From positions 434,001 through 498,000 of IMG/VR virus record IMGVR_UViG_3300024239_000011: a stretch of DNA of 64,000 nucleotides. The stretch is one strand, 5' to 3'. Of this stretch, positions 27,181 to 46,259 are shown one piece after another; positions within the stretch are counted from its first letter, which is position 1, and every line of letters begins with the position of its first letter. Position numbers and translations under genes: made by a program. The notes under the pieces were generated by a model. It ran no database searches. It was not told the origin of the DNA and worked only from the letters and a program-made list of their open reading frames with translations.

Positions 27181-27768
27181 TCACTCGACCCATTTCAGTT
27201 TGAAGAGGGTGGCATCCGAGGATTTTTGAAAGGCATACACGACGGAATTCAGTCCAGCAGTTGCCCAAATCGTCCAGGGCATACGTACTGTTTTCGCGAT
27301 CCATTCGTGTAAATCGTCGTTGTCCAGCGATTCCTTTGGCATTTCCACCCAGTACGGCAGCAGTTCCTTGATTGCATCCCCAAAAGAACTGGTGGTGCAA
27401 TTCTTCACGCGCTCCCACCACGGTCCATTAAAGAAAAATTCCCATTTGAGGCGTTTGTTTTTGTCAATCCACTGTGGGGTGATTTCAATGTGGTTCCCGT
27501 CCAAATACGGATTGAAGGTCGCATTGAAGGTTTCTGGCTCCCATCGGAGGACGTATTTTACAGCGTGGTTGATGTTGGGAATTACCAGCATACAAGAATC
27601 TGCTTCGCAGTAGTTATGAGCGTAGCGTTGAGCAACCGTGATTTTACCATCAGTAGAAGTAAGATGAAATTTGATTTTTTGTTTACGCAACCATAACACT
27701 ATTGTTAGTGGTAACTGCTTTTGGTAGAACTTGAATTGTATGGACATTCCTGACTCCAAAGCCTGCAT
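27181..27768 (-). CDS. ATLFxLxW family protein (two repeats)
   Basis: Ends FQKSSDATLFKLKWVE; internal HAVKYVLRW. Confidence 0.7.
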   Translation of the reverse strand: MQALESGMSIQFKFYQKQLPLTIVLWLRKQKIKFHLTSTDGKITVAQRYAHNYCEADSCMLVIPNINHAVKYVLRWEPETFNATFNPYLDGNHIEITPQWIDKNKRLKWEFFFNGPWWERVKNCTTSSFGDAIKELLPYWVEMPKESLDNDDLHEWIAKTVRMPWTIWATAGLNSVVYAFQKSSDATLFKLKWVE

Positions 27769-28073
27769 CTATCCTGTATACAGGATTGACAGGGTTCCTC
27801 GTCAATTATCGTTTTTTCTTCCCATCGCAGACGGAATAAAGTGGCATCACTTGTTTTTTGGAAATAATAACTGGTGTGTAACTTTCTATTATTGCTCGTT
27901 ATAAAAACCTCGGCAGCACAATGACCAACAATCCATAGGTCAATTTCTTTAGTATGGGATTGATCCAGTATCACGCATTGACGCATTTTAGTCGTCAATG
28001 CAATACCCCAGCGTCGGGAAATTGTTCCCACGTTATCACCGGTATTTCTGGAAAGCACTGTACCCATCAGCAC
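27705..28073 (-). CDS. ATLFxLxW family protein
   Basis: YYFQKTSDATLFRLRW. Confidence 0.65.
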   Translation of the reverse strand: MLMGTVLSRNTGDNVGTISRRWGIALTTKMRQCVILDQSHTKEIDLWIVGHCAAEVFITSNNRKLHTSYYFQKTSDATLFRLRWEEKTIIDEEPCQSCIQDRCRLWSQECPYNSSSTKSSYH

Positions 28074-28336
28074 CAGCGTATCTTAAACAGGGTCGCGTGT
28101 TGGCTCTGTTTGAAGCGGAATTGCCCTGAATTCCACGTCACGTAGCACCACAGGTTTTCGCCTGTTTTTTTGACCCGTTTCTCGGTACCAAAAATACTTC
28201 GAAGGCTTTGGGGGCATTTTGGACAATCCCCAATGGTTTCCCAAAGCCAGAATACGATAGGCTGACGGGAATTGACTGGAAATGGAATGGTTACCAAGTA
28301 GGGGTATTCAACCTCAACACCCATCATCAGCACCAT
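28067..28336 (-). CDS. ATLFxLxW family protein
   Basis: FRFKQSQHATLFKIRWC. Confidence 0.7.
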   Translation of the reverse strand: MVLMMGVEVEYPYLVTIPFPVNSRQPIVFWLWETIGDCPKCPQSLRSIFGTEKRVKKTGENLWCYVTWNSGQFRFKQSQHATLFKIRWC

Positions 28337-29085
28337 TTCATACGGAAAAGGGTTGCGTGTTTTTTTTCTTTAAACATGATTTTTCTGGGGGCGCGAATTA
28401 CCGGGAACGGGTAGCGGTCATATTCTTTCGTCATGAGGTGGGTTGGGCGGTACCCGTGTGGGGCGATGTGTTCCAACCAATCAAACAACCGCCACTCATT
28501 GAAATTGAACCGGGGACTGAAATCGTATTCCACCGCCGCTTTTGCAGTTGCCATTCCCATACCAATTTCATATTGATGCGTCGTGTATATCTGCTCATGA
28601 ACCGGACGGTCAATTTGTGCGATTAGTTGATCACGGGCAACCATTTGTGTCATTACTAGTTCAGCCATCCGACTACAAATTTGGTTGTATATCGGATCAT
28701 TGCGGCTTTCTTCATCATCAAAGCCTTTAATGTCGAATGCAATCCATCCTCCTGATCGCCAACCATCAAATTCGCTGTGAAAATTCCAGGCGCGAGCTAC
28801 GCATGCAATTTTGTTTTCATGCTGGACTACCTCGGTATCAAGATTTCGGATTGCCAGGATCGTTCCGTCTTCGAGCGTGACCGATCCCTTCTTCATTGCT
28901 GCTTGTACCCTAGGGTCGTGTTGACGCACGACATGGGCGATGCCCGCACTCCATTCGCGAAGGTATTCCTCTTCGTCACCAATACGTTGACCGTTATCAA
29001 CAATCCCATTTACCTGCTTAACAAATTCTGGGTTTTGTTCTTCTTCACCAAGCTTGGTAAGAAATTCTTGAAGTCGCTGGTTCAT
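28327..29085 (-). CDS. Hypothetical protein with C-terminal ATLFxLxW domain
   Basis: IMFKEKKHATLFRMKWC. Confidence 0.7.
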   Translation of the reverse strand: MNQRLQEFLTKLGEEEQNPEFVKQVNGIVDNGQRIGDEEEYLREWSAGIAHVVRQHDPRVQAAMKKGSVTLEDGTILAIRNLDTEVVQHENKIACVARAWNFHSEFDGWRSGGWIAFDIKGFDDEESRNDPIYNQICSRMAELVMTQMVARDQLIAQIDRPVHEQIYTTHQYEIGMGMATAKAAVEYDFSPRFNFNEWRLFDWLEHIAPHGYRPTHLMTKEYDRYPFPVIRAPRKIMFKEKKHATLFRMKWC

Positions 29086-30125
29086 GCGACATTCCAATCG
29101 GTAAATTGTCGCACGATGAATTGCCCACATGCTGCACGAACCTCGCTGCCAACGCTGATCTGAACCTTTAAGAACGGGATTTCAGCAGCAAGACGATCCA
29201 AAATCGTTTCGAACCGGTCGCTTTCGGACAACGGGGTGTTATCGCAATGATTGTAGCGCAGGATGCGGAATTCGTATTTTTCCAGACCGTGCTTTTTATG
29301 GAAGTTGATTAAAGCGTCGATTTCCCGGTCACTATCGTTCACGCCATGGATGAACATGTGGTGGAAAATGACGTTATGCTGGTTTCCCTCCGCATACTCT
29401 TTCAATGTCACCACGGACTCGTCTAGGGGCGTGGCACCAGGGATGATTTCGTTTCGAGTTTCTTGAATTGCCGAGTGCAAAGAGTAAAAAACTCGAAAAC
29501 GGCTGCGGTTGATATATTCCTGGGGACCAGTTGCGTCTTGGGCATGAACCATCAGTTTGTTGTTGGGGTTGGTTGGAAACTGCTTTAGCTGATAGTCCAA
29601 CTCGTGAAATACATCCATCCAGCGTCGGTGAATGTGGGGCGGAAGTACCGTCGCTAGATCGACGCCATCCACACCAGCCGCTAATTTATTATCCATCACA
29701 TGAGTGAGGAAATCCATCGTCAGTCGGGCGGTGCGATCTGGGCGAATCATTTGATCTTCGCCCATACCCATCCAACACAGCTTCACGTAACGATCAGCAA
29801 TGCCAGGATCATGGTCGGCTTGTACCGCAAGCGCAGATTTAAGGTTTTCCAGAATCGCGCTTTCATCCAGTTTTGCGTATTTCATCCCCTTCATAGTGAG
29901 ATAACAAAACTTACATTTCATGAAGCATCCAGCCGATGCCGAGGCAAACACGCTGTACTTATTGCGGTCAATGGAATTATGTTCAAGCTTGCCAGTCACC
30001 GGATTGCGAATAGTATCGCACGAACTAACCATTTTCACGGCGGTTTCACTGTTATCCGCGTGAATAATTTTGGTAGTTAACGAATCATCACTGACAAATA
30101 CTTCCTGCTCATCTAGCATGGACAT
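29082..30125 (-). CDS. RlmN/Cfr-like radical SAM enzyme
   Basis: GCFMKCKFC, MGMGE, YSLHS, GVNDS, G.EVRAACGQ. Confidence 0.85.
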   Translation of the reverse strand: MSMLDEQEVFVSDDSLTTKIIHADNSETAVKMVSSCDTIRNPVTGKLEHNSIDRNKYSVFASASAGCFMKCKFCYLTMKGMKYAKLDESAILENLKSALAVQADHDPGIADRYVKLCWMGMGEDQMIRPDRTARLTMDFLTHVMDNKLAAGVDGVDLATVLPPHIHRRWMDVFHELDYQLKQFPTNPNNKLMVHAQDATGPQEYINRSRFRVFYSLHSAIQETRNEIIPGATPLDESVVTLKEYAEGNQHNVIFHHMFIHGVNDSDREIDALINFHKKHGLEKYEFRILRYNHCDNTPLSESDRFETILDRLAAEIPFLKVQISVGSEVRAACGQFIVRQFTDWNVA

Positions 30126-30173
30126 TTCCCTCTCTTTTGAAGAGGGAATTATATCGAAGCTAGACCATTAAGG

Positions 30174-30641
30174 TCAATTTTTCGACTTACGTTCTGGACC
30201 AAAGTATTTCTCAGATTTAATGAAGTTTGTTGGTTGAAAAAGGCAGGCATTAACCCGTTCTTCTAATTGAGAAATGGTTGTCCCAGCGGTGATAATCGCG
30301 TTTGCCCCGTACTGTGCTGCTTGGTTTACTCGGTTTTTGTCTGGGTCATCAAATAAGATGATTACCGGGACATATGGATTGGAGCCATATGCTCCATGCC
30401 GTACATCGTCCAAAAGGGACAGTCCCGATATACCGGGGAGGTCAGCCGATAAAATTAGAAGATCATGAGGCTGTCGCATCGCATTCAAGGTTTCGACCCC
30501 ATCATTCACCTGAATTACCCAGAACCCCAAATTGAACAGTGACATTCCAAGCTGGGTACCTTTACTGGTGTCAGCAATAGCCACAATAATGACGATTTGT
30601 GATCGAGTTTTGGTATTGGGGTTGATTTTAATTAATTGCAT
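30174..30641 (-). CDS. Single-domain pseudo-receiver (response regulator-like)
   Basis: DLLILSADLPGISGLSLL..VR...NPYVPVIIL...GAN...YFGPERK. Confidence 0.75.
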   Translation of the reverse strand: MQLIKINPNTKTRSQIVIIVAIADTSKGTQLGMSLFNLGFWVIQVNDGVETLNAMRQPHDLLILSADLPGISGLSLLDDVRHGAYGSNPYVPVIILFDDPDKNRVNQAAQYGANAIITAGTTISQLEERVNACLFQPTNFIKSEKYFGPERKSKN

Positions 30642-30962
30642 CTATGCCCATCGCAAGCGGAATAAGGTAGCCTCTTGTGAAAGAGAGAATCTGGCAAAGT
30701 ACCATGCCCCATTCATGGAAAAATAATTGGTTTTCAGATTATACACGAAAATGATTTTCGTTAAAAAATTGACGGTACCCTGACAGGTTTCCTGGCACCA
30801 TTCCTTCATACGCGGATAGTCGTAATCATTAGTGAAAAGAATATCCAAACGGGTCTTTTTGTATGGCAGCGATTGTTCAAAAAGAAGATGCATTGGAATC
30901 CGCGTGGGGTCAATACTATCCTCATATGGGCATAATCGAGTTGCTTGTTTTCTCATGCCCAC
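30642..30962 (-). CDS. ATLFxLxW family protein
   Basis: MKEWCQE...FSLSQEATLFRLRWA. Confidence 0.7.
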   Translation of the reverse strand: MGMRKQATRLCPYEDSIDPTRIPMHLLFEQSLPYKKTRLDILFTNDYDYPRMKEWCQETCQGTVNFLTKIIFVYNLKTNYFSMNGAWYFARFSLSQEATLFRLRWA

Positions 30963-31174
30963 TTCAGTCTGAACATGGTTGCTTGCCGCCGGTCTTCAAA
31001 CCGAAAGGTTCGGGAAACTTTCGAGTCCGGACACACCGCCCCAAAAAAAGCAACCAACCCCGATGTTTCTTCTTGATCCACGTCTACAATACCGAAACCG
31101 ATGTCTTTACACCACGAGAGCATCTGAAATACCTGCTCTTGTGTCGCATCAATATTCACGCATACGGAATTCAT
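30953..31174 (-). CDS. ATLFxLxW family protein
   Basis: MLSWCKD...FRFEDRRQATMFRLKWA. Confidence 0.7.
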   Translation of the reverse strand: MNSVCVNIDATQEQVFQMLSWCKDIGFGIVDVDQEETSGLVAFFGAVCPDSKVSRTFRFEDRRQATMFRLKWA

Positions 31175-31479
31175 TTAAGCCTCGCAAAGGGTGCGGTAAA
31201 TTTGTTTTGATCCTCGCATGCCTTCATTTTAGCAAGCGTCGCAAATTGGGGATCATCAAATGCAATGATTATCTCCAACGCGGACCCGACCGTAGAGAAA
31301 ACCGGCTTTAAATCAATGCGATATTGTCCTGCGCAAAAACTGTCCAACCACGTGAATGTATCAGGGTATTCTTCTCTCGCTTCACCCATCATAAATTGGA
31401 TGTCTTCGGCGGTTGCCCCTCGGCGCCCGGCGTGTCGAACTCGTGTGCCCATACGGCCAATGGATACAGCTACAGTCAT
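31171..31479 (-). CDS. ATLFxLxW family protein (divergent)
   Basis: TWLDSFC...IAFDDPQFATLAKMK. Confidence 0.6.
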   Translation of the reverse strand: MTVAVSIGRMGTRVRHAGRRGATAEDIQFMMGEAREEYPDTFTWLDSFCAGQYRIDLKPVFSTVGSALEIIIAFDDPQFATLAKMKACEDQNKFTAPFARLK

Positions 31480-31620
31480 TTTGTACCTCTTTGATTCGTA
31501 AGATAATGTTCACGTTATGTTCCGTCGATTTATTTTTCATTGCTATCGAGAAAAATTCACACAGCGGTAACATAGTATGGTGATACAAGTCGGTAAATAA
31601 CCTCAACTAGGAGGCAAATA

Positions 31621-32379
31621 ATGAAGGCTTATCGTACTATTTGGATTAGTGATACGCATTTAGGGACTAAAGGTTGTAAAGCATCATTTTTAGTCGATTT
31701 CTTAAAACACAATACTTGCGATACACTTTATCTTGTTGGCGACATCATCGATGGATGGCGCATGAAAAGTGGCATGTTTTGGCCGCAAGAACATACAAAT
31801 GTAGTCCGTCGAATATTGACCAAGGCAAAACGCGGTACGAGCGTTGTTTATATTCCAGGGAACCATGACGATTTTCTTCGGGCGTGGTTGGAGTATCATC
31901 CTCAATTCGGGAACATAGTAATACAGAACGAAGCGATTCATACCTTGAGTGATGGACGTAAGGTGTTGGTAACTCATGGCGATCTTTTTGATGGCATCAC
32001 GTGTTATGCGCCGTGGCTTTCAAAACTAGGTGATCACGGATATGGTTTTTTGCTAACATTCAATCATTTGTTCAATAAGGTTAGGAGTAAATTAGGGTAC
32101 AAATATTGGTCCTTGAGTTCTTTTGTAAAAGGAAAGGTCAAATCCGCTGTGAACTTTATTACCAGTTTCGAGCAATCACTTGCACGTGAGGCAAAAACAC
32201 GGGGACTGGATGGGGTGATTTGTGGACATATTCACCATGCGGAGATACGCGAGATTGACGGAATACTCTATGCCAATGATGGTGATTGGGTAGAAAGTTG
32301 TACCGCACTAGTCGAACATCATGACGGGCGTCTTGAGATCGTCAAATGGGTTGAAATTTCACATGAGCAAGAAATATGA
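31621..32379 (+). CDS. PlcP/LpxH2-like metallophosphoesterase (putative phospholipase C)
   Basis: ISDTHLG, LVGDIIDGW, PGNHD, HGDLFD, ICGHIH, NDGDWVESCTALVE. Confidence 0.85.
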   Translation: MKAYRTIWISDTHLGTKGCKASFLVDFLKHNTCDTLYLVGDIIDGWRMKSGMFWPQEHTNVVRRILTKAKRGTSVVYIPGNHDDFLRAWLEYHPQFGNIVIQNEAIHTLSDGRKVLVTHGDLFDGITCYAPWLSKLGDHGYGFLLTFNHLFNKVRSKLGYKYWSLSSFVKGKVKSAVNFITSFEQSLAREAKTRGLDGVICGHIHHAEIREIDGILYANDGDWVESCTALVEHHDGRLEIVKWVEISHEQEI

Positions 32380-33383
32380 AGATAGTAATTTGCACAGATG
32401 CCTCCCGTCCACAGATCAACGGGGTCGTAACTACTCTGGAACATACAAAAACAGAGCTTGAAAACCTTGGTCATGAAGTCATTATGATCGAGCCATCGTT
32501 ATTCGCAACGATACCTTGTCCAAGTTATTCGGAAATTCGCTTAGCGTATAATGCTTTTTGGCATCTACCCCGCCTTATAAATGAAATTGACCCGGATTCC
32601 ATACATATAGCAACGGAAGGTCCGATTGGCGCTGCGGCGCGGTTATACTGTGCGTTAAAACAGATACCATATTCAACATCTTACCATACAAAATTTCCAG
32701 AATATGTTCGCAAACGTTGGCCGATACCGTTATGGGTTACGTATGGTTACCTTCGCTTGATACACGGCAGCGCCAAGGCAATATTGGTTACGACTGGATC
32801 AATGGCTACCGAATTACATGAGCGTGGATTTAAAAACCTAGTCGTATGGTCTAGAGGCGTGGATTCGGATTTGTTTTCACCATCGCGTGCGACTGATCTC
32901 GGGTTGCCACGCCCAATTCATCTGTCGGTAGGGCGTATATCAATAGAGAAAGGTTTGGATGATTTTCTCGCCCTACAAATACCCGGCACCAAATTGGTAG
33001 TTGGGGATGGTCCACAATTGAAGGATATGAAGAGCCGATATCCTGATGCGATTTTTGTAGGAGCAAAGCGTGGAACCGATCTGGCGACATATTACGCCTC
33101 TGCTGACGTTTTTGTATTTCCGAGTAAGACCGACACATTTGGGGTGGTAATGCTTGAAGCAATGGCGTCCGGTACCCCCGTCGCGGCTTATCCGGTTACC
33201 GGACCAAAAGATGTGATCACCAATGGGAGCGGTAAGCTGGATACCGATCTCAAAAGGGCAATTGAACATTGTTATACGATTGACCGGCGTCAATGCGCTG
33301 AGTTGGGGCGCACATTCACCTGGGAGTCATGCGCCCGCACTTTCCTCAATTCATTGGCGATCATCCCCAAATTTACGCGCTAA
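32376..33383 (+). CDS. GT4 glycosyltransferase, Agt-like
   Basis: TDA..PQINGVV.TL, HIATEGPIG, SYHTKFPEY, FPSKTDTFGVVMLEAMASGTPVAAYPV. Confidence 0.88.
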   Translation: MKIVICTDASRPQINGVVTTLEHTKTELENLGHEVIMIEPSLFATIPCPSYSEIRLAYNAFWHLPRLINEIDPDSIHIATEGPIGAAARLYCALKQIPYSTSYHTKFPEYVRKRWPIPLWVTYGYLRLIHGSAKAILVTTGSMATELHERGFKNLVVWSRGVDSDLFSPSRATDLGLPRPIHLSVGRISIEKGLDDFLALQIPGTKLVVGDGPQLKDMKSRYPDAIFVGAKRGTDLATYYASADVFVFPSKTDTFGVVMLEAMASGTPVAAYPVTGPKDVITNGSGKLDTDLKRAIEHCYTIDRRQCAELGRTFTWESCARTFLNSLAIIPKFTR

Positions 33384-33411
33384 ATAGAAAAACCGATGTT
33401 ATTTGGAGTAG

Positions 33412-34667: not shown

Positions 34668-34673
34668 ACTCCC

Positions 34674-35249: not shown

Positions 35250-35429
35250 TGGAAATCCTCGGTTTTCATGCCTTCATCCATAGGCACCGAGGTATTTATC
35301 ATCGCTCTTCGAAAAAATTTTGAAAATAGTGTTGACAACCTGAAGCTGGGTAAGTAAATTGATCTTCAGACGGGGAGCCGAACCCAGTCGAAGACAACAG
35401 ATCGGCACATGGACTACGGAGAACAAAAT

Positions 35430-35906
35430 ATGTCTGCCCAAAACACCGAACGTAATGCCTTCATCACCCAGGGCGTCAACGCCTTCCTCAACGGCGCTGG
35501 TGCCGGTGTCACCCGCGAGAAGATCGCTGAAGTCACCGCCGCGCTGGGCGATGCCTTCGACAGCATGAACAAGCCCGCCGAAGTCGTCGCCGAGAAGCCG
35601 GTGCCCGCCATCGCGGTCAAGAAGTCGATCAACCCCGATTTCATCGTCTGCCTGGAAGACGGCAAGAAGCTGAAGATGCTGAAGCGCCATCTGCGCACCA
35701 CCTACAACCTGTCCCCCGAGGAATATCGGGAAAAGTGGGGTCTGCCCGCCGACTACCCGATGGTCGCCCCGAACTACGCCGCTCAGCGTTCGTCGCTGGC
35801 GAAGGAACACGGTCTGGGTCGCAAGCCCGCCGCTGCCGCCCCGGCTGCCCAGCCCGCCGACGCCAAGCCGCGCCATCGCCGCAAGAGTGCCGACAAGGCG
35901 GCGTAA
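35430..35906 (+). CDS. mucR: MucR/Ros family transcriptional regulator
   Basis: PAIAVKKSI.PDFIVCLEDGKKLKMLKRHL...YREKWGLPADYPMVAPNY...RS.LAK..GLG. Confidence 0.95.
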   Translation: MSAQNTERNAFITQGVNAFLNGAGAGVTREKIAEVTAALGDAFDSMNKPAEVVAEKPVPAIAVKKSINPDFIVCLEDGKKLKMLKRHLRTTYNLSPEEYREKWGLPADYPMVAPNYAAQRSSLAKEHGLGRKPAAAAPAAQPADAKPRHRRKSADKAA

Positions 35907-35967
35907 CAGCCGCCTACCCCTCCCCAATGTCACTAACTAGGGGAGGCGGCAATGCCCGAAAGCTAAG

Positions 35968-37643: not shown

Positions 37644-37697
37644 GGCATACCCTCGATCTCGTTTATGTGAGTATACTACCTTACCATGTATTACATG

Positions 37698-38288
37698 TCA
37701 AGCAACCGGCCAAATATTTTTGCTGTATTCGTATATTTCTTTCCAGCCAGTTACAACGGTTGGACCCTCATGGGCTTCCATTGTATTGTATTCACGGTCA
37801 ATAAGGAATGCTTTATGCCCTAGCCGATGCCCTGCGTTCGCATGGCGCCACGTGTCTTCTACCCAGATTGTGGGGTCGTATTTAGACAACCAGTGTTCCT
37901 TGCTGTCATGTACACCAACCGTGTGGATATGATCGAAGATCGGACCAAAGCACGTTTCGAGGTTCTGCTTCCGCATCCGGTAGGTGATGTCAGCAGGACC
38001 GCAGGCAGTGATGGCGACAAATCGCCATCCATCCTCCACAAATTTCGGGATGTATTCCAGTGCATCGTCAAAGGGCGGTAGCGTGGAAAGTGCATCCCCG
38101 TCGTGAAATTCACTGATTATACGGGTGGCTTCGTCCGGATGAATGTCAAGCCAATCCTCGACGTGGTAATGGCTCGCCCAATCCTTGGTGATTGGGAGCT
38201 TGAGGACGTTTCGTACATAATCCTCAAAGGCTTTCTTCCAGTATAAAAGTACACCGTCTACATCCGTGAGAATAGTTCTCATTTGCAT
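37698..38288 (-). CDS. HAD-family 5'-nucleotidase-like hydrolase
   Basis: ILTDVDGVLL, FVAITA, WVED...A..G..LG. Confidence 0.85.
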   Translation of the reverse strand: MQMRTILTDVDGVLLYWKKAFEDYVRNVLKLPITKDWASHYHVEDWLDIHPDEATRIISEFHDGDALSTLPPFDDALEYIPKFVEDGWRFVAITACGPADITYRMRKQNLETCFGPIFDHIHTVGVHDSKEHWLSKYDPTIWVEDTWRHANAGHRLGHKAFLIDREYNTMEAHEGPTVVTGWKEIYEYSKNIWPVA

Positions 38289-38821
38289 TTCTTTGACGCC
38301 TGCGGGAGATCGTTGTATTCGCTCGTCCAATACGAGCCAAGTTGTTTTCGTGCCCAATCCATGACTTTGTGGCTATAATTCCATACGTAACCATGCTCAT
38401 ACGCCAACCCGAAGCCAACTTCCCACGCGGTGCCTTCTGCGGACATAGTAGACATGGTGTAGCCACGACCACGGAGAACGGTTGTAGACATGACATGATG
38501 CCCAAGTTCATGGAAGAATGCGGCTATTTCAATCTCTGGGTCGTCAAACTCACCCATGAAGATTTCGTTCCCTGCGCATGCAGCATGATTACGACCGCAA
38601 TTCTCGGTATCGCGATAAACGGTGACCTTGTAAAGCTTTGCAATCCGATTGATTTCTGGTGACAAATCGTTGGATACGGGTCCACGATATTTCTCACGAA
38701 ATCGCCATATTCCGGTCAGCCGGGTATGTACCATCGCCATTTTGTGATGGTATTCGCGCATCATATAACATAATGCCCGCAAATAATCAAAACCCGTTTT
38801 GTGATCTTCAGTTTTACTCAT
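38279..38821 (-). CDS. HExxH metallopeptidase-like protein
   Basis: FFHELGHH...E..AW. Confidence 0.6.
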   Translation of the reverse strand: MSKTEDHKTGFDYLRALCYMMREYHHKMAMVHTRLTGIWRFREKYRGPVSNDLSPEINRIAKLYKVTVYRDTENCGRNHAACAGNEIFMGEFDDPEIEIAAFFHELGHHVMSTTVLRGRGYTMSTMSAEGTAWEVGFGLAYEHGYVWNYSHKVMDWARKQLGSYWTSEYNDLPQASKKCK

Positions 38822-39314
38822 CCCATTTCAACCTATAAAGGGTGGCGTATTTTTTCTCTTTAAAAATGTAAAACTGCCGTTGTGGTTTATCGGCTTTGAA
38901 TTGATAGCGAATGTATTCAGTTTCGTTTAATGTCTCACGTTGCCAAGCCCATTCTTCATCAGTACATGGACCTGTGACTATGGCACACCCCGTCATATCG
39001 ATGATTTCTTCAATAACTTGAGCAAGGAATTCAGCTTGGCGTTGCCAATACCCGGCTAGTTCTTCATACTCTTCAGCTTTTTTAATAAATGTTTCCGCGT
39101 AATCGAGATCACCAGATTCGCTTTCCGCTTCTTTTATAAACCGATACAACGTCGCTTGGTCATCATCTGCATCGGCTTTGCAAACGGCGTTCTGGATGGT
39201 TCTAATCGCCCCCAGAAGGCGTCGTTTCTCGTAATCGGATGATGAAGGCTCCGCTGGTGCTTCAGCGGCAAATCCCGCCAAGACCTCTTTCAGCGAAGCC
39301 CCCATAATCTTCAC
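38814..39314 (-). CDS. Hypothetical protein with C-terminal ATLFxLxW domain
   Basis: YIFKEKKYATLYRLKWDE. Confidence 0.7.
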   Translation of the reverse strand: MKIMGASLKEVLAGFAAEAPAEPSSSDYEKRRLLGAIRTIQNAVCKADADDDQATLYRFIKEAESESGDLDYAETFIKKAEEYEELAGYWQRQAEFLAQVIEEIIDMTGCAIVTGPCTDEEWAWQRETLNETEYIRYQFKADKPQRQFYIFKEKKYATLYRLKWDE

Positions 39315-39724: not shown

Positions 39725-39726
39725 TC

Positions 39727-40167: not shown

Positions 40168-40234
40168 TGTTCACCTTCTATGTTATTTTTACTTCGCTAA
40201 ATACCACCGCTTCATGAATAATAGGTGGTGTTAA

Positions 40235-40786
40235 ATGGGAAAGAGGTCTGATTTTGAACGAGTTGAACGCGATTTCTATCCAAGCCCCTATGCTGCTGTT
40301 ATCCCGTTATTTCCGCACCTTGCTGCCGGTACTCACTTTGACGAGCCGTGTTGCGGCGATGGGGCACTAATCAAGCATCTTGAAAAGAACGGGCACGTTT
40401 GTTCGTTTTTCTCGGACATCGAGCCACAAATCGACGCGCCGCGCCTGGATGTATTTTCGCTGACCGAATGTCGCGGCGATGTGTTCATTACCAATCCCCC
40501 ATGGGATCGCAAAATTCTTCACCCTCTCATCGATCACCTGACCAATTTGGCCCCAACTTGGCTCTTGTTTGATGCGGATTGGGCACATACCGTTCAGTCT
40601 GGTCCCTACATGCAATATTGCCGTAAGATCGTAAGTATCGGTCGCGTCAAGTGGATTGAAGACTCAAAGATGACCGGAAAGGATAATGCCTGTTGGTACC
40701 TCTTCGATAAGAAAGCAGACGGACCAACTGTGTTTTACGGTCGAAAAACCGACCAGTCCTTGAATTCAGCGTTGTTTCAGTTTTGA
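40235..40786 (+). CDS. Amino-DNA methyltransferase (probably N6-adenine)
   Basis: DFYPSP, EPCCGDG (motif I), ITNPPW (motif IV). Confidence 0.85.
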   Translation: MGKRSDFERVERDFYPSPYAAVIPLFPHLAAGTHFDEPCCGDGALIKHLEKNGHVCSFFSDIEPQIDAPRLDVFSLTECRGDVFITNPPWDRKILHPLIDHLTNLAPTWLLFDADWAHTVQSGPYMQYCRKIVSIGRVKWIEDSKMTGKDNACWYLFDKKADGPTVFYGRKTDQSLNSALFQF

Positions 40787-41763
40787 TAGCGCCACCCATA
40801 GCCTCCGGTGGATTTGCGTTTGCCTTTGCATACTGCGGCGATGTTCGCTCCATTGAGCATGTTCATCGCCGCTGCCGCCGACGCAATGCATTCAAAGGAT
40901 TCTAGAACTTCGCCGGTCACCAAATCAATTTTCTCCACCGGGCGCATCTGATCGCGGTTTCCTTCACGGATTCGCTGTTTGTGATCGTCAGACAATTGGC
41001 GGGCATCTTTAGTTGGTTCGGTGACATATCGCCAGCCGAAACCTCCGTGAGTCTTAGATGGTCCCCCTTTGCACACTCGACTAATGCTTGCTGCTTGCAA
41101 ATCTAACGTTTTTGCTGCCTCGCTAATCGACTGAAATACCCGAATAAGCGTTCTATAGTCCGGGGTAAATTGTTGAACAGCAAGCCATTGATGGGAATTT
41201 GCAAGCCTTCTCTTTTCAACCACGTCTTGCGGTTGTTTCTTTCCCCAACGATGACTTTCTTGCCCTCGTTTATGGGGGTTATTTTGCTTCCAAAACTCAG
41301 ACCGAGTTTCTTTTTGTTCATCCGACATTTGCTTACCAAACATTGGGTTTTTGTCCCCAAGTTTCGCTTGGCGAATGTGGTCGGCGTGCGTGTCAGATTT
41401 TTTCTTCCCTTTAAGGGATTTGCTGAGATTTTGACGGTGTAGGGCGGTGGCAATGTACCCATAGGTACCTTCACCACCGTCCGTCATATTCATCCCGATA
41501 CCAGTTGGATACCGAACCATGTTGGTTTGGTATTCTTCTATAAGCATGATCTCTTTCATCATTGCTTCTTCTGGCGACCCATACGAGGCAACTTCGACCA
41601 TGACAAAGTTCTCTCTGCCGTATTTCTGGATGCAATTTTGGAGATAGCAGTTTTTCTTGTCACCACGACAGTGACGTTCAAACCGCTTCTCCAAAGGTTG
41701 CCGTGTCCAGCCAAAGTATACTTTGCCGGTTATTGTGCATGTGATCTTGTAGACTGTGTTCAT
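40777..41763 (-). mobile_element. Free-standing GIY-YIG homing endonuclease (NUMOD3 plus two NUMOD1)
   Basis: VYKITC...VYFG.T, GMNMTDGGEG, KNPMFGK; two F.SI.EAA...I..VCKG....GG.GWRY repeats. Confidence 0.9.
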
Positions 41764-41811
41764 AGTGATGTCTCTGACTTTGGTTACTCCATCACTATTT
41801 ATAAAACAGCC

Positions 41812-42972
41812 TTAATATGCCCGACATATGGTCAATTTCTTTGCTGCGCGGGTTATAGCAGTGTATGCCCATTCGGCTCTTATGGACGAATCCCACATAC
41901 CAAATCCGTCGTCGTAGATGAATACTTCCTCCCATTGTGATCCCTGCGATTTGTGACAAGTTACGGCAAAACCGTAATCGAACAGTTGTATTGTCCGACT
42001 TCTTAACTCGTCCATCACTTCTTTGTCTGTTCGCTTACGCGAATAGTCAATGAAAGCGCCGGTACCGATCTCCAAGTCCTCAAGTACGGTTTGGTCTTCA
42101 TCCACCACGGACTGAAGGATGAATTTGCCATTCTTGCTGATGTAGGGTTTCTCACCAGCAGTCCAGAAAGTCATACCGTTGAGAAGACCTAAATTGTGTC
42201 GATTGCGAAGGCATATGAGCTTGATCCCCTGTTTAAGAGGATAAGCATCCGTGAAACCATGGGCATCCTTGATTTCTTTGTTGAGCATGCGCCGGGTGTC
42301 GTTCTTACCCGTGATGATCTGCTCGGCATTCAGGAGGTGATTGAAATCCAGCGTGGTGCTGTTGATATCGACCACCCGTACACCATCGCCGTAGTCGCCC
42401 AGCGGGATCGTCTTCTTCTCTCGCGCCCACGTTGCCAGTTTGATAATTGGCGAATCCGCAGCTTGACGATGCACTTCGGTGAGGAAGTGATCAGGGGTTT
42501 GGCGCGTGAAGGCGCCCTCGCCCTTGATGGGACGAATCTGCCCCGGATCACCCAGGACAAGAATTTTGACTCCAAACGACTTCAAGTCGTTCGCCATGTT
42601 GTCATCAATCATCGAGCATTCGTCCAGCACCACCAGCTTGGTGCTACGAAGCATGCTATCCTTGTTCAGGCGAAACTTGATATGCCCATGTTCGTCCTCA
42701 TACGGCTGGTAGATCATGCGGTGAATGGTCGTGCTGGTAATCAATCCGTTCTTTCGCATGACCAGCGCCGCTTTGCCGGTATACGCACCGAACATCACAT
42801 CCAGATCGCTTGCAATTGACAGTCCGAGAGCGTCAATGGCGTACTGGGTGATCGTGGTTTTACCGGTACCAGCATAGCCCGCCAGATAGAAAACCTGATT
42901 ATCACCTTGCCTGAACCACTGGATGATCTTGCGGATACCTTCGTTCTGTTGTTCTGTAGGTTTGAAATCCAC
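41812..42972 (-). CDS. Dda/RecD-like SF1B DNA helicase
   Basis: GYAGTGKT, AYTGKAA, LDECSM, GDPGQI, LTEVHRQ, TCHKSQGSQW, YTAITRA. Confidence 0.92.
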   Translation of the reverse strand: MDFKPTEQQNEGIRKIIQWFRQGDNQVFYLAGYAGTGKTTITQYAIDALGLSIASDLDVMFGAYTGKAALVMRKNGLITSTTIHRMIYQPYEDEHGHIKFRLNKDSMLRSTKLVVLDECSMIDDNMANDLKSFGVKILVLGDPGQIRPIKGEGAFTRQTPDHFLTEVHRQAADSPIIKLATWAREKKTIPLGDYGDGVRVVDINSTTLDFNHLLNAEQIITGKNDTRRMLNKEIKDAHGFTDAYPLKQGIKLICLRNRHNLGLLNGMTFWTAGEKPYISKNGKFILQSVVDEDQTVLEDLEIGTGAFIDYSRKRTDKEVMDELRSRTIQLFDYGFAVTCHKSQGSQWEEVFIYDDGFGMWDSSIRAEWAYTAITRAAKKLTICRAY

Positions 42973-43320
42973 TTAGGTAATCCTTTGTCCGGTGACGATT
43001 CGCTCCCGTGGGGGGAGCGAATCGACGTGCGCTTCAAAAAGGCGCATTTGTTCTTCTGTCGGGAAATAGATTTCGATGAACCACTTATGCTCGAAGCACT
43101 TGATCCAACCTGGGCAATGTTCATCGAGCCATGGATGTAGTTCATCACGAACATTTTTTTCCGGTAGCCGCCAATGAAGACCCCAAGATAAACCCACCAC
43201 TTTATCAAAAAACGACGGGTCGTCTTGTACATCCACGCGAATGACAAAGCCATCCGTTTTGCCTTCAAGTGCGACGTATCGCAGTTCTGGAAACCATACT
43301 GGTCCAAACCGCATTCTCAT
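42973..43320 (-). CDS. Hypothetical protein
   Basis: Probable start MRMRFG overlapping the upstream stop; WLDEHC...IYFPTEEQMRLF distantly resembles the ATLF family. Confidence 0.55.
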   Translation of the reverse strand: MRMRFGPVWFPELRYVALEGKTDGFVIRVDVQDDPSFFDKVVGLSWGLHWRLPEKNVRDELHPWLDEHCPGWIKCFEHKWFIEIYFPTEEQMRLFEAHVDSLPPRERIVTGQRIT

Positions 43321-43625
43321 CCTCGACACCTTTCCATGTATTTCCACATGGTACGGACACGAACGTTTCGTAGGAAGCTCTCGATGACTTCCGGTTCCCC
43401 GTCCATTGTGGTTTTGATTTTTTCTTTCTTGAACATGCGGTCGATTACGTCTTCGGGACACCGAAGACGTATCATCCAGTCTTCGATTTTGACTGGCTCC
43501 CCTGCTTGCTGTTTTCGTTTATTCACGCAAAGATCGGCAATCTGATCGGAAAAACGCTCTACTTCTTGAGCGAGATTTACTTCTCGATCACCGATTTTTG
43601 TATTGATGGTAGTAAGATCGATCAT
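43317..43625 (-). CDS. Hypothetical protein
   Basis: Operonic ORF after the clamp loader. Confidence 0.6.
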   Translation of the reverse strand: MIDLTTINTKIGDREVNLAQEVERFSDQIADLCVNKRKQQAGEPVKIEDWMIRLRCPEDVIDRMFKKEKIKTTMDGEPEVIESFLRNVRVRTMWKYMERCRG

Positions 43626-43627
43626 GC

Positions 43628-44578
43628 TTACCCCCGACGAATTTTTGCCAAAGATACAATCGTGGCGCTCAAATTTATTTCTGGATCGCAGACCAATGCA
43701 TGTTTATAAAGCCCGTCACGGATCACCAGAATTGCTTCATCCTGCTGTTCCAGTTTGTCGCCCCACCAATCTAGATTACGGTAGAACATGGTGTATAGTT
43801 CCTCGTATTCATCGGCTTTGGCCTGCTCCACAATCATCTTGCGGGCTTCCGTGATCTTCCCCTTCTTGAAGAGATCAATAGCGGCAACTTTGTAATCTTG
43901 TGATCCAGAAGTATCACTGGAATTGGGCTTGACGAGTCTGCCATCAATGACATTGTTTTGAACATCGTTGATGCATTTGCGCAGATCGGGATACGCCGCT
44001 TGAACAAAGGTGTTCAAGATGTCCACGTCTTCAGCCGTCGCAATAGCGACACCTTCAGCCTGAAGAATGGTAATCATACGCATAAGGAATTCTTCGAAAT
44101 CCAACTTCTCGATATGGAATCGTTGACAACGGCTATTTGAAAGTGCCGGAATGATTTTTTGGGGATAATTACACGTGAGAATGAAGCGGCAATTGTTGTG
44201 ATATTGCTCGGTGACACCACGTAGTACCGCCTGGGCGCTCAGCGACAGGTAATCCGCTTCGTCCAGCACGACGTACTTGAAGTCGTAATCACCAAACGGC
44301 ATTGTCGAGGCAAAGTTCACGACTTTTTCGCGGATGGTATCGACATTGTTTTCCTGAGATGCATTGATCTTCAGAATGTCGCCATTTTTGACGCCCAATT
44401 CATTGAGCAGCACATAAGCAAGGCTGGTTTTTCCGACGCCTTGAGTGCCCGACAAGAGCAAATGGGGTAGGGCGCCATCTTTGACCCAATCAAAGCACTT
44501 ACGTTTCTGATCGCTATCACGGAATACATATTCGGACAGTTTCTTCGGGCGGTATTTTTCAGTCCAAAGTTCGCGCAT
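43628..44578 (-). CDS. Clamp loader AAA+ subunit (T4 gp44/RFC-small-like)
   Basis: WTEKYRP, PHLLLSG..GVGKTS, INAS, VVLDEADYL..AQ..LR, FILTCNYP.KII, SRC. Confidence 0.93.
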   Translation of the reverse strand: MRELWTEKYRPKKLSEYVFRDSDQKRKCFDWVKDGALPHLLLSGTQGVGKTSLAYVLLNELGVKNGDILKINASQENNVDTIREKVVNFASTMPFGDYDFKYVVLDEADYLSLSAQAVLRGVTEQYHNNCRFILTCNYPQKIIPALSNSRCQRFHIEKLDFEEFLMRMITILQAEGVAIATAEDVDILNTFVQAAYPDLRKCINDVQNNVIDGRLVKPNSSDTSGSQDYKVAAIDLFKKGKITEARKMIVEQAKADEYEELYTMFYRNLDWWGDKLEQQDEAILVIRDGLYKHALVCDPEINLSATIVSLAKIRRG

Positions 44579-44717
44579 AACCCAAATTTCTCCTTCTGTT
44601 CTGCCAGGACGATAGCAGAACGCCTCGATAGGGGTCAATTTACGGCGTCGAGGGGAGAATGGTCAATTTAAGAGAAATAAAGCCGCCAGCGAAGTAATCG
44701 TGGCGGCTTTACATGGA

Positions 44718-45324
44718 TTAAGCAGTAATGGGACGCGGTGTTCGCGCTCGTACTATATGAGCGGTGACAATTCCCGCTAACATACCACAAAGATGACCTT
44801 CCCATGAGATACCGGGTTGACCCGGTAGGACACCGAAGATGATCGTTCCGTAGTAAAATACAACACCAATGGTGGTTATTATGGCAAGGGCAGATCGTTC
44901 CGTAGTAAAATACAACACCAATGGTGGTTATTATGGCAAGGGCAGATCGTTCCGTGAAAGCCAGCGCCAGTACGTAGCCGAACAGTCCGAAAATTAAGCC
45001 ACTGGCGCCGATGTGGACGCTATGGGGGTTTCCCAAGACCCACGTTCCCAATCCACCCATGAAGATAACCAGCATAGATACCATCAAGAACCGGAACATC
45101 CCGCGAGCAGCGACCAGACACCCAAGGATGAACATAGGACCGGTATTACTGATTAAATGTCCACGCCCGCCGTGCAGGAAAGGTGAAGCGAAGATTCCCG
45201 GAAAAGGATTTGAAGAACCCGGTTTGATACCATATTGGTCAAGCCGGTGTCCCATGCCCTGGTTAATGAACTCGATTATCCATATCGCGGCAATGAACAG
45301 GACAACCGGCGCAAAACGTTTCAT
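44718..45324 (-). pseudogene. Rhomboid intramembrane protease, frameshifted
   Basis: PFLHGG..HL.SN and HIGASG in one frame, ISWEGHL.G in another, separated by a 52 bp tandem duplication. Confidence 0.85.
44841..44955. repeat. 52 bp perfect tandem duplication plus 11 bp terminal microhomology
   Basis: 44841-44892 equals 44893-44944; GATCGTTCCGT recurs at 44945-44955. Confidence 0.95.
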
Positions 45325-45369
45325 TCTTTGTCCTCGACTTGAATTTACACCAGTTTCGGTTTAAGCCTT

Positions 45370-45843
45370 TTAGGGAAGGATGTAAACCACTGGCTGAATG
45401 TCAGTGAACGAAGTTTCGATGATCTCAGCGATCACTTCCCATTTCCCGCCCCCTCGGTCGGCACCAATAAGGGGCATGCCGACGCGGGTTCCCATGGTAC
45501 CTCCGGTTGCGGTATTGACCGCTACCATGTCAGCGTTAATTTTTGCAAAGCAGTCTGCCAGGGCGTCATAGCTGACGTATCGCTTCCCATCATACCCATA
45601 GAATTGCTGGGTAATGCAATTTGCAATCATCTTCGAACCGCAATCTGCCCATATTACTTGTCCGAGGTGCAGAACATTACCTTGATCAATGTACGTTTTG
45701 CGGTATTCGGTGAAAGCTGGGGGAAAATGGTTTTTAATAGCTAAAGCGACCCCTGACCCTTGCACCCCCATGGAATTGCAACCATGTAAAATGCAATATT
45801 CCTCTGCGCGTAACAAATCACCTTCAATATATTCGATTTTCAT
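45370..45843 (-). CDS. Macro domain protein (ADP-ribose processing)
   Basis: IEYIEGDLL, HGCN..G..GSGVA.AI, MPLIGA..GGG.W. Confidence 0.88.
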   Translation of the reverse strand: MKIEYIEGDLLRAEEYCILHGCNSMGVQGSGVALAIKNHFPPAFTEYRKTYIDQGNVLHLGQVIWADCGSKMIANCITQQFYGYDGKRYVSYDALADCFAKINADMVAVNTATGGTMGTRVGMPLIGADRGGGKWEVIAEIIETSFTDIQPVVYILP

Positions 45844-46259
45844 GCCCATAACCTGAATAGAGTGGCATCGCGTTTGTTGTCGAATGCCACTATGGTGTGC
45901 CGTGTCATGGGACCGCCGGTCGCCGGGGCATAGGCGACAACGGCAATTTCGGCAGTGCCGGTGATTCGTACATCCAACCATGCCCTGAAAGCGTCGGTGC
46001 GGTCTTCCATGCCGTCAACTGTAACATAGGTGGATGGTTCAAACGAAAAAAGAAATGGGGTGATCCGGGCAAGCATAACTTTGACCGTATCAATGTTAGG
46101 GAAGTATTTGTATGTATAGGATGTTGTACTGATGTCTGGTACAAGACCAGTCAAGCCGAGGTCGCGTAGCAAAATACGACGACACTCGGCTTGAAAATCT
46201 AGAGCTTGCTGGGGAACCCAAGCAGGATTTCTTGGGAGATACAGGCGGTACTCAGTCAC
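45840..46259 (-). CDS. ATLFxLxW family protein
   Basis: FRAWLD...VAFDNKRDATLFRLWA. Confidence 0.65.
   Translation of the reverse strand: MTEYRLYLPRNPAWVPQQALDFQAECRRILLRDLGLTGLVPDISTTSYTYKYFPNIDTVKVMLARITPFLFSFEPSTYVTVDGMEDRTDAFRAWLDVRITGTAEIAVVAYAPATGGPMTRHTIVAFDNKRDATLFRLWA

What the first reader, a model, noticed from the sequence alone, without database searches (positions are those of the whole stretch)
27181..46259. Expanded family with the C-terminal motif F-x5-A-T-[LM]-F-[RK]-[LIM]-[RK]-W
Seen in nine ORFs (27181, 27705, 28067, 28327, 30642, 30953, 31171, 38814, 45840), often with an upstream W-[CL] helix and otherwise divergent sequence. They form two tandem, translationally coupled arrays flanking the RlmN-like and receiver genes, and some are fused to unrelated N domains. 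Inference: a small alpha/beta module diversified as a library of adaptors, for example host-target binding with a shared docking helix.
Basis: partly seen in the sequence, partly recalled or inferred. Interest (0 to 1): 0.6.

Follow-up and report, generated by a model that had tools for sequence, protein, structure and literature searches.

The report
Unnamed multi-copy small-domain family of giant phages
Nine genes in this stretch of a 543-kb phage genome encode copies of one small, undescribed protein domain that other very large phages carry in up to dozens of copies; its function is unknown, so it is a good target for naming and testing.

Summary
All nine ORFs carry the motif: seven match the strict pattern (5.5e-5 expected by chance) and two are degenerate. 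An iterated HMM finds five more copies elsewhere in the same 543,035-bp virus genome.

The motif is the end of a module of about 65-75 residues. AlphaFold predicts it as beta-alpha-beta-beta-alpha, a ferredoxin-like fold without the last strand (pLDDT 80). The conserved positions look like the domain's core, not an active site.

Seven copies lie with a receiver gene and a radical-SAM gene in one minus-strand operon. Every junction but two is an ATGA, TGATG or TAGATG overlap. dN/dS against a related strain is 0.06-0.19, so these are real genes.

The family is not private to this genome. A profile search found about 100 cluster representatives, nearly all metagenomic proteins of 55-100 aa. Whole-record profile matches: Sinorhizobium phage Phosso 48, PA5oct 4, Atu_ph07 4; a freshwater phage contig has 26-35 copies within 20 kb. 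All are annotated hypothetical. Nothing matches in Pfam, PHROGs, NCBIfam, PADLOC or PDB sequences.

The paralogues are old: their nearest relatives are in other phages. I infer diversified non-virion binding modules for host takeover or counter-defence. A shared docking helix remains possible but untested.

The parts
31171..31479 (-). m7, first gene of the operon (102 aa). Degenerate member: W-L helix, then F-x5-ATLAKMKA and a 15-aa tail.
   Evidence: ORF. The outside-built HMM gives E 6e-10. AGAGG lies 8 nt before the ATG, and an ATGA overlap joins it to m6.
30953..31174 (-). m6, the minimal member (73 aa), which is the bare module.
   Evidence: HMM E 5e-17. AlphaFold pLDDT 80: b1 4-11, a1 12-25, b2 30-34, b3 52-59, a2 62-72.
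30642..30962 (-). m5. Likely start is the ATG at 30956 (104 aa). It has the W-C-x3-C-x-G helix and ends ATLFRLRW-A.
   Evidence: ATGA overlap with m6, and TAGATG abutting the receiver gene. dN/dS 0.06 against L006.
30174..30641 (-). Context, not a family member: stand-alone receiver-domain gene inside the same coupled operon.
   Evidence: Pfam Response_reg E 2.5e-7. Junction.
29082..30125 (-). Context, not a family member: radical-SAM gene (CX3CX2C) inside the same operon.
   Evidence: Weak Pfam Radical_SAM hit, E 4e-4. ATGA overlap with m4. dN/dS 0.02.
28327..29130 (-). m4. Likely start 29085 (about 251 aa). N-domain of about 190 aa of unknown fold plus a C-terminal module ending ATLFRMKW-C.
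   Evidence: Full-length homologue P0086 in another phage contig: 36% identity over 231 aa, E 2e-47. dN/dS 0.08.
28067..28336 (-). m3 (86-89 aa), ends ATLFKIRW-C.
   Evidence: TGATG junctions on both sides. dN/dS 0.12.
27705..28073 (-). m2. Likely start is the ATG at 28067. The module ends at RLRW and is followed by a 38-aa Cys-rich tail (C-x2-C-x4-C-x6-C) that overlaps the start of m1.
   Evidence: The tail is conserved in L006/L007. HMM E 2e-16. dN/dS 0.19.
27181..27768 (-). m1, last gene of the operon. Likely start 27747 (188 aa, GGAG 9 nt upstream). C-terminal module ends ATLFKLKW-VE. The N-terminal 70 aa resemble a decayed module.
   Evidence: The N-terminal resemblance is not significant: hhalign probability 3.7%, and the AlphaFold model of the whole protein has pLDDT 37. 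dN/dS 0.10.
38814..39314 (-). m8 (163-166 aa). Helical N-terminal part plus a module ending ATLYRLKW-DE. It lies in another coupled gene string, between a 137-aa ORF and an HExxH-motif ORF.
   Evidence: HMM E 7e-9.
45840..46259 (-). m9 (139 aa), module ending ATLFRLWA. It is coupled between the GroES-like gene (4-nt overlap at its start) and the macro-domain gene (ATGA if the latter starts at 45843).
   Evidence: HMM E 8e-10. Phosso also has family members between its GroES and clamp-loader genes.

Best explanation
Shown:
- The nine ORFs are real, selected genes that share one homologous module of about 65-75 residues, normally at the C-terminal end of the protein.
- The module is predicted to fold as beta1-alpha1-beta2-beta3-alpha2. 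That is a three-stranded sheet backed by two helices, i.e. a ferredoxin-like (ACT/RRM-like) fold without the fourth strand.
The upstream W-[CL] is in alpha1.
- The family is confined to phages as far as seen. It is multi-copy in very large T4-related phages and has no entry in any family library searched.
- The copies here are ancient paralogues kept in tightly coupled operons.

Inferred:
- The conserved residues form the hydrophobic core and helix caps.
- Everything else varies freely: the beta2-beta3 segment, the strand surfaces, the N-terminal extensions, and net charge (pI 4.7 to 9.3).
- The module is therefore a stable scaffold on which each paralogue presents a different binding surface.
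- I take these to be non-virion accessory proteins. Each would bind a different host or phage target during takeover or counter-defence.
- The two conserved basic residues and the fixed W-x-COOH end may add a function common to all copies.
For: Motif and family:
- 7 strict motif hits against 5.5e-5 expected.
- 14 copies in the genome.
- A profile built almost wholly from other phages hits all nine ORFs.

Fold:
- AlphaFold model of m6 with pLDDT 80, and 88-94 over beta3 and alpha2.
- Structural neighbours are ACT, RRM and similar ferredoxin-like domains at Z 7 or below.
- The nearest viral models are uncultured-phage hypothetical proteins.

Conservation:
- Per-column conservation shows invariant W and A, and near-invariant F, F, L and W, with variable positions between them. 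K/R is conserved at two helix positions.
- pI is spread widely: 43% acidic, 34% basic.

Genes and age:
- Purifying selection, dN/dS 0.06-0.19.
- ATGA, TGATG and TAGATG junctions.
- Nearest neighbours of most copies are proteins of other phages at 30-42% identity.
- DNA repeats between copies exist only over the motif.

Distribution:
- About 100 cluster representatives.
- 48, 4 and 4 profile matches in Phosso, PA5oct and Atu_ph07.
- 26-35 copies within 20 kb of contig L009.
- 3-12 copies in each of five IMG/VR fragments that CheckV rates 1-26% complete.

Non-virion status: the PA5oct members carry no ESI-MS/MS virion note in the record, while neighbouring genes do.
Against: - No partner, ligand or phenotype is known for any member, so the function is inference from pattern alone.
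- Core versus surface was judged from residue type and helical spacing, not from model coordinates, which the tool does not return.
- The fold model rests on one member with a 14-sequence alignment. Its beta2-beta3 segment is poorly predicted (pLDDT 58).
- Two conserved basic residues, and a C-terminus fixed at exactly one residue after W in 42 of the 78 outside members that carry the helix motif, suggest something common to all copies that a pure scaffold model does not need.
- Timing of expression is unknown.
Confidence: 0.5

Rival explanations
1. Adaptor library with a common partner. The last helix, with its two conserved basic residues and terminal Trp, docks every paralogue onto one shared host or phage machine. 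The variable part brings in different targets.
For: - The only conserved polar surface candidates are the K/R pair in the last helix and an acidic residue before the Trp of helix 1.
- The end of the protein is fixed at W plus one residue in 42 of 78 outside members.
- Copies are co-expressed in coupled operons.
Against: - Most of the conserved helix is hydrophobic and fits a buried face.
- Several members carry C-terminal tails of 15-38 aa (m2, m7, and the copy at genome 328333) or lose the terminal W. This is hard to square with an obligatory C-terminal docking site.
- No candidate partner is conserved next to the family in other phages.
Confidence: 0.2
2. Small nucleic-acid-binding regulators. 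The module would be an RRM/KH/ACT-like domain that binds RNA or DNA, and each paralogue tunes translation or stability of a set of transcripts.
For: - Fold neighbours include an RRM (6exx, Z 6.4), KH domains, ribosomal protein S6, PrfH and an RNA ligase domain.
- The basic pair in the last helix is conserved.
By eye it has a CX3CX2C motif and an A-A-C-G-Q stretch near its end.
Against: - All fold scores are in the range the tool itself calls a common arrangement (Z under 8).
- No Pfam RRM, KH or ACT hit at E up to 1.
- The conserved aromatic residues of beta3 sit at the alternating positions that face the core in an RRM, not at the RNA-stacking positions. This is my reading of the alignment.
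- 43% of members are acidic.
- The fourth strand of those folds is absent.
Confidence: 0.15
3. Substrates or partners of the operon's radical-SAM enzyme. The small proteins would be precursor-like substrates recognised through the shared C-terminal motif.
For: Seven members are translationally coupled in one operon with the radical-SAM gene, and a related strain keeps this arrangement.
Against: - The family occurs in dozens of copies without any radical-SAM gene nearby: L009, L012, Phosso and PA5oct.
- The 344-aa gene next to the PA5oct members is unrelated to the radical-SAM protein.
- The full-length homologue of m4 sits next to a DNA methyltransferase instead.
- The motif is predicted to be a packed helix of a folded domain, not a free peptide.
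Confidence: 0.03
4. No function: a chance motif, decaying duplicates, or overprinted ORFs.
For: Two copies are degenerate. One copy has lost its usual stop and runs into the next gene.
Against: - Chance expectation of 5.5e-5.
- dN/dS 0.06-0.19 at dS 0.3-0.9.
- Profile hits to about 100 independent clusters.
- Conserved coupling signals at the gene junctions.
Confidence: 0.02

Closest known systems
Hypothetical proteins of jumbo phages PA5oct (RefSeq tags PQE65_gp209, gp210, gp202), Sinorhizobium phage Phosso (e.g. XYS97292, 97294-97296, 97301-97302, 97635-97636) and Atu_ph07
   Same: True family members. They show the same W-[CL] helix and ...F-x-F-x4-[DE]-A-x-[LM]-F-x-L-x-[WF] end, the same size, and the same multi-copy habit and coupled small-gene strings. 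In Phosso some lie between the GroES and clamp-loader genes, as m9 does here.
   Different: None has a name or a tested function. Copy numbers differ widely (48, 4, 4). The receiver and radical-SAM genes inside the array are seen only here and in close strains.
ACT domain (e.g. TyrA of Bacillus anthracis, PDB 5uyy/5v0s) and other ferredoxin-like regulatory domains (PII, DUF2007, DUF1330)
   Same: Best structural matches: Z 7.0, rmsd 2.3-2.5 A over 60-63 residues. The order of beta-alpha-beta-beta-alpha elements is the same.
   Different: No sequence match. The last strand is missing. No ligand-binding glycine loop was seen. The Z score lies within the range expected for a common arrangement.
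RRM (RNA recognition motif)
   Same: Same element order. By my own comparison the spacing also resembles the RRM pattern of aromatic-x-aromatic at the end of beta3, then four residues, then D/E-A opening helix 2. An RRM scores Z 6.4.
   Different: No RNP1/RNP2 signature and no Pfam hit. The conserved aromatics fall on the core-facing positions. There is no beta4, and many members are acidic.
Lineage-specific expansions of small domains in giant phages, e.g. the roughly 35-copy zinc ribbon of Bacillus phage G (PMC7824862)
   Same: Same kind of phenomenon: one small domain multiplied to tens of copies in a very large phage genome, with an unknown and probably binding role.
   Different: A different fold and family. 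That review, in the passages found with the five search terms used, does not mention the present family.

Membership tests
Unnamed phage family defined here (W-[CL] helix plus F-x-F-x4-[DE]-A-x-[LM]-F-x-L-[RK]-W end) | Significant match to a profile built from members in other phages | tested here: met
   All nine ORFs match the A2 profile (64 of 65 rows from other phages) at E 5e-17 to 7e-9. Twelve places in the whole genome match by the genome search.
Unnamed phage family defined here (W-[CL] helix plus F-x-F-x4-[DE]-A-x-[LM]-F-x-L-[RK]-W end) | Invariant Trp in helix 1 and invariant Ala at the start of helix 2 | tested here: met
   W21 and A65 (m6 numbering) are invariant in A1 (14 sequences) and A2 (65 sequences).
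Unnamed phage family defined here (W-[CL] helix plus F-x-F-x4-[DE]-A-x-[LM]-F-x-L-[RK]-W end) | Module ends the protein, with 0-3 residues after the last aromatic | tested here: met
   Seven of the nine ORFs meet this; m2 and m7 have tails of 38 and 15 aa. Outside this genome, 70% of members have a tail of 3 residues or fewer.
Any family in Pfam-A, PHROGs v4, NCBIfam 20, PADLOC-DB 2 or PDB sequences | Sequence match at or near the curated threshold | tested here: not met
   No consistent hit for the nine ORFs, the 14 own-genome copies, the 65 outside members or the members in isolates.
ACT domain (PF01842) | beta-alpha-beta-beta-alpha-beta fold with a Pfam match | tested here: not met
   No Pfam hit. 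The model lacks the last strand. Fold similarity of Z 7.0 is only a common arrangement by the tool's own caveat.
RRM (PF00076) | RNP1 and RNP2 motifs with exposed aromatics on beta3 and beta1, and four strands | tested here: not met
   No Pfam hit. Three strands in the model. The placement of the aromatics was judged from the alignment only.
Radical-SAM-modified precursor peptides | Constant genomic association of precursor genes with the modifying enzyme | tested here: not met
   There is no radical-SAM gene beside the family in L009, L012, L024, PA5oct or Phosso.
Virion (structural) proteins | Detection in purified particles | not testable with these tools
   The only indirect evidence is that the PA5oct members lack the ESI-MS/MS note that neighbouring genes carry in the record.

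The most novel reading that the evidence does not exclude
The module is the building block of a phage 'multigene family' system comparable to those of large eukaryotic DNA viruses. Tens of paralogues per genome would each recognise a different host defence or housekeeping protein through the variable face. All would hand their target to one common machine through the conserved basic, Trp-ended C-terminal helix. That would make it a new, widespread class of phage takeover adaptors specific to giant T4-related phages.
Probability: 0.12. Interest if true: 0.75.

Novelty: new variant of a known kind. Interest (0 to 1): 0.45.

Why it matters
Giant phages owe much of their size to unexplained small genes. 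Here one recognisable domain accounts for 14 genes of a 543-kb genome. It gives 48 profile matches in the cultured Sinorhizobium phage Phosso and makes up roughly half of a 20-kb small-gene array in a freshwater phage, yet it has no name in any library searched.

Defining the family would turn many 'hypothetical proteins' into one testable class. Members exist in phages with laboratory hosts: PA5oct on P. aeruginosa PAO1, Atu_ph07 on A. tumefaciens C58, and Phosso on S. meliloti. Binding partners, toxicity and counter-defence roles can therefore be tested directly. If the copies prove to be diversified binders on a fixed scaffold, the family would also be a natural model for how phages evolve target-recognition repertoires.

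Tried and rejected
- Megablast of the array against GenBank phages: no match.
- tblastn of single outside members against phages: nothing for P0025 or P0021. P0026 gave only a weak hit (E 0.1), which nevertheless led to Phosso.
- Word-based protein search with the 14-copy alignment: found only this genome's proteins and near-identical strains. The exhaustive profile search was needed to reach the wider family. Two of its hits, P0068 and P0102, are false positives made of fn3 and InlB-type repeats.
- Second AlphaFold job on the whole 188-aa m1, to test for tandem modules: pLDDT 37, unusable.
- hhalign of the m1 N-terminus against the family: probability 3.7%, not supported.
- Homodimer prediction for m6: no answer. 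This is not evidence either way.
- Conserved synteny with the neighbouring glycosyltransferase and metallophosphatase genes in L009 and L012: only superfamily-level similarity, so rejected.
- The PA5oct 344-aa neighbour as a homologue of the radical-SAM gene: rejected.
- Word search for relatives of the m4 N-domain: found itself only. The Atlas look-alike search for m4 gave no named family and holds no model.
It was replaced by a degenerate DNA pattern for D-A-T-L-F-K-L-R-W.
I did not try to reach reads another way, so expression was not examined.
- The PA5oct paper holds no supplementary per-gene expression table in the library.
- Text searches of the jumbo-phage review and of the Atu_ph07 and AP-J-162 papers found no mention of such a family.
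Full report

All nine ORFs are present on the minus strand at the given coordinates.

- The strict motif F-x5-A-T-[LM]-[FY]-[RK]-[LIM]-[RK]-W occurs seven times in the six-frame translation of the whole genome. All seven lie inside the finding's span, and six end one or two residues before a stop; the seventh is the 27705 copy described below.
- From the genome's own residue frequencies 5.5e-5 such hits are expected, and twenty shuffles gave none.
- Two ORFs are degenerate. ORF 31171-31479 has ATLAKMKA and a 15-aa tail. ORF 45840-46259 ends ATLFRLWA.
- In 27705-28073 the motif is internal. The frame runs on for 38 residues into the next gene.
- The upstream W-[CL] is also real. That Trp is invariant in every copy aligned.

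**2. The genome**

- The window is positions 434,001-498,000 of a single 543,035-bp contig with 48.7% G+C. It is held as an IMG/VR virus record, linear, and rated 100% complete by CheckV.
- Neighbouring genes are typical of T4-related giant phages: gp44-type clamp loader, PhoH, a Dda/RecD-like helicase, a GIY-YIG homing endonuclease, NUDIX, a macro domain, a GroES-like gene and MucR/Ros.
- The clamp loader is closest to the PA5oct group (56% identity), then Sinorhizobium phage Phosso (469 kb, 47%), Agrobacterium phage Atu_ph07 (490 kb, 44%) and Ralstonia phage RsoM2USA.

**3. How many copies, and how are they arranged?**

- An HMM built from the nine modules and iterated over all stop-to-stop frames converges on 14 members. 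The five extra copies lie at genome positions 42272, 199623, 246588, 328333 and 353848. The last has an N-terminal hydrophobic segment.
- Nine of 14 copies in 19 kb of a 543-kb genome is far from random (binomial P 1e-10 for this window, chosen post hoc).
- Seven copies lie in one minus-strand operon running from 31479 to 27181: m7-m6-m5-receiver-radical SAM-m4-m3-m2-m1.
- Read base by base, the junctions are ATGA (m7/m6, m6/m5, radical SAM/m4), TGATG (m4/m3, m3/m2) and TAGATG (m5/receiver). The two exceptions are a 48-nt gap before the radical-SAM gene, which holds a promoter-like site, and the m2/m1 junction, where the m2 tail overlaps the m1 start.
- The other two copies sit in other coupled strings. 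m8 lies between a 137-aa ORF and an HExxH-motif ORF. m9 lies between the GroES-like and macro-domain genes.
- Likely true starts, from ribosome-binding sites, junctions and gene calls in public assemblies, are 27747 (m1), 28067 (m2), 29085 (m4), 30956 (m5) and 39305 (m8).

**4. Are they genes?**

A related strain is available on two JGI contigs (L006 and L007, 82-93% nucleotide identity). It keeps the gene order.

| Gene | dN/dS against L006 |
|---|---|
| m1 | 0.10 |
| m2 | 0.19 |
| m3 | 0.12 |
| m4 | 0.08 |
| m5 | 0.06 |

These values hold at dS 0.3-0.9. The genes are under purifying selection.

**5. What is the module?**

- AlphaFold on the 73-aa m6 with the 14-copy alignment gives pLDDT 80. 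The elements are beta1 (4-11), alpha1 (12-25), beta2 (30-34), a poorly predicted segment, beta3 (52-59) and alpha2 (62-72).
- In the 65-sequence alignment of the wider family the informative columns are:
  - V and I/V/L in beta1.
  - I/M-x-[DE]-W-[CL]-x2-N-C-x-G at the end of alpha1.
  - W/Y in beta2.
  - F-Y-F in beta3.
  - D-A-T-L-F-[KR]-L-[RK]-W in alpha2.
  - Little information elsewhere.
- These are mostly hydrophobic residues spaced as core positions, plus helix caps. The only conserved polar candidates for a surface site are the two basic residues of alpha2 and the acidic residue before the Trp of alpha1.
- Isoelectric points range from 4.7 to 9.3 here. In the wider family 43% of members are acidic and 34% basic.
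- Fold searches give only generic ferredoxin-like neighbours:
  - ACT of TyrA at Z 7.0, an RRM at Z 6.4, and PII, S6 and EF-G domains lower.
  - Foldseek's best hit is E 0.085.
  - The search tool warns that Z under 8 may mean only a common arrangement.
- The nearest predicted viral structures are hypothetical proteins of uncultured tailed phages with about 22% identity. These are probably members.

**6. The wider family**

- No Pfam, PHROGs, NCBIfam or PADLOC model, and no PDB sequence, matches any copy or 65 outside members.
- The exhaustive profile search found 101 cluster representatives at E 1e-3 or better. Two are repeat-protein false positives.
- The rest are almost all metagenomic proteins of 55-100 aa with the same two signatures.
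- Of the 78 outside members that carry the helix motif, 42 have exactly one residue after the last Trp.
- They come in crowds, as these counts show:

| Record | Size | Matches or copies |
|---|---|---|
| Contig L009 (freshwater) | 154-kb contig; 20-kb one-strand array of about 65 small ORFs | 26-35 copies, depending on threshold |
| Contig L012 (has haem oxygenase and bilin reductase genes) | 29-kb contig | 6-8 copies |
| Sinorhizobium phage Phosso | 469 kb | 48 profile matches |
| PA5oct | 287 kb | 4 |
| Atu_ph07 | 490 kb | 4 |
| RsoM2USA | 344 kb | 0 |
| P-SSM2, T4, RaK2, SCTP-2, HTVC008M | 147-440 kb | 0 each |

- Five IMG/VR fragments that contain the exact D-A-T-L-F-K-L-R-W each carry 3-12 copies. 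CheckV rates them 1-26% complete at 4-149 kb, which implies parent genomes of several hundred kb.
- In the cultured phages all members are annotated 'hypothetical protein'. The PA5oct members lack the virion mass-spectrometry note that neighbouring genes carry.
- Searches of the jumbo-phage review and of the Atu_ph07 and AP-J-162 papers found no description of the family.

**7. Age of the copies**

- For most copies the best BLAST partners are proteins of other phages at 30-42% identity, not the neighbouring paralogues.
- DNA-level repeats between copies exist only over the motif, at 64-82% identity over 28 nt.
- The repertoire is therefore old, or exchanged between phages. It is not a recent local burst.
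- m4 has a full-length homologue in an unrelated context: P0086, 36% identity over 231 residues, next to a DNA methyltransferase.
- Tandem two-module proteins occur elsewhere in the family: P0029, P0030, P0036, P0039 and P0079.
- The first 70 residues of m1 look like a decayed module, with a W-L helix and I-x5-A-V-K-Y-V-L-R-W at the right spacing. This is not significant by hhalign (probability 3.7%), and the whole-protein model failed.

**8. Mechanism**

What is shown is a phage-restricted, multi-copy, selected domain family with a predicted split beta-alpha-beta fold whose signature is its core.

What I infer, at about 0.5, is that the domain is a stable scaffold. Each paralogue would present a different binding surface and act as a non-virion accessory protein in host takeover or counter-defence.

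The rivals are:

The conserved K/R pair and the fixed C-terminal end keep it alive. Members with long tails, and the lack of any conserved neighbour, weaken it.
- **Nucleic-acid binding (0.15).** It rests only on weak fold resemblance and the basic pair.
- **Substrates of the radical-SAM enzyme (0.03).** The family's distribution without any such enzyme contradicts this.
- **No function (0.02).** Selection and distribution rule this out.

The homodimer prediction gave no answer and counts for nothing.

**9. Limits**

I did not seek reads by another route, so transcription was not examined.
- Burial of the conserved residues was inferred from residue type and spacing, not measured on coordinates.

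**10. Verdict**

- The family is real, widespread in very large T4-related phages, unnamed and of unknown function.
- I rate it a new variant of a known kind, namely lineage-expanded small domains of giant phages on a common fold, with moderate interest (0.45).

Noticed in passing
window 44841-44944 (inside the rhomboid-like ORF 44668-45324, minus strand): A perfect 52-nt tandem duplication (two copies, 100% identical) shifts the frame of the rhomboid-like gene. The same 20-residue stretch appears in two overlapping ORFs. This is either a real disruption or an assembly artefact.
   Followed up: partly
L008 (ENA ERZ27245855, contig k141_178484): The same array, with identical proteins, lies on a public metagenome contig of 869,618 bp. 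That is much longer than the 543,035-bp record rated 100% complete. By position it would extend past both ends of the record. Whether it is a concatemer, a misassembly or a larger genome was not checked.
   Followed up: no
L007 versus window 27181-28336: Mosaic strain. On contig L007 the m1 gene is 100% identical to the window in nucleotides, while the adjacent m2 and m3 are only 82-89% identical and match the L006 type. This suggests recombination inside the array.
   Followed up: partly
window 27705-27821 (tail of m2): The 38-aa extension after the motif carries four Cys spaced C-x2-C-x4-C-x6-C and overlaps the start of m1 in another frame. The related strain keeps it. It may be a small metal-binding tail.
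   Followed up: no
genome 353848-354222 (L004:3001-3375, minus strand): One dispersed family member has an N-terminal hydrophobic, probably membrane-spanning segment before the module. It ends with a 7-aa tail and has A-A-R-F-K-L-E-W in place of the usual helix.
   Followed up: no
window 29082-30125 and 30174-30641: A phage radical-SAM gene sits in the middle of the small-gene operon, together with a stand-alone receiver-domain gene. The radical-SAM protein has CX3CX2C and an A-A-C-G-Q stretch near its C-terminus, reminiscent by eye of RlmN/Cfr. It is very strongly conserved (dN/dS 0.02). A promoter-like TTGACC-18-TATAAT lies in the 48-nt gap between the two genes (30177-30148).
   Followed up: partly
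window 38279-38821: The ORF downstream of m8 (180 aa, no Pfam hit) carries an H-E-L-G-H motif and may be a small metallopeptidase. It overlaps the end of m8 by 8 nt.
   Followed up: no
window 35409-35906: A full-length ROS/MucR-type regulator (Pfam E 2e-39) is encoded by the phage. To my knowledge this family is typical of alphaproteobacteria, which hints at the host group, as does the kinship with rhizobial jumbo phages.
   Followed up: no
L009 (JGI 3300025723, Ga0208741_10000012, record positions 116408-136641): A 20-kb one-strand run of about 65 ORFs of 50-150 aa in a 154-kb phage contig. Roughly half belong to this family. It is the densest array seen here.
   Followed up: partly
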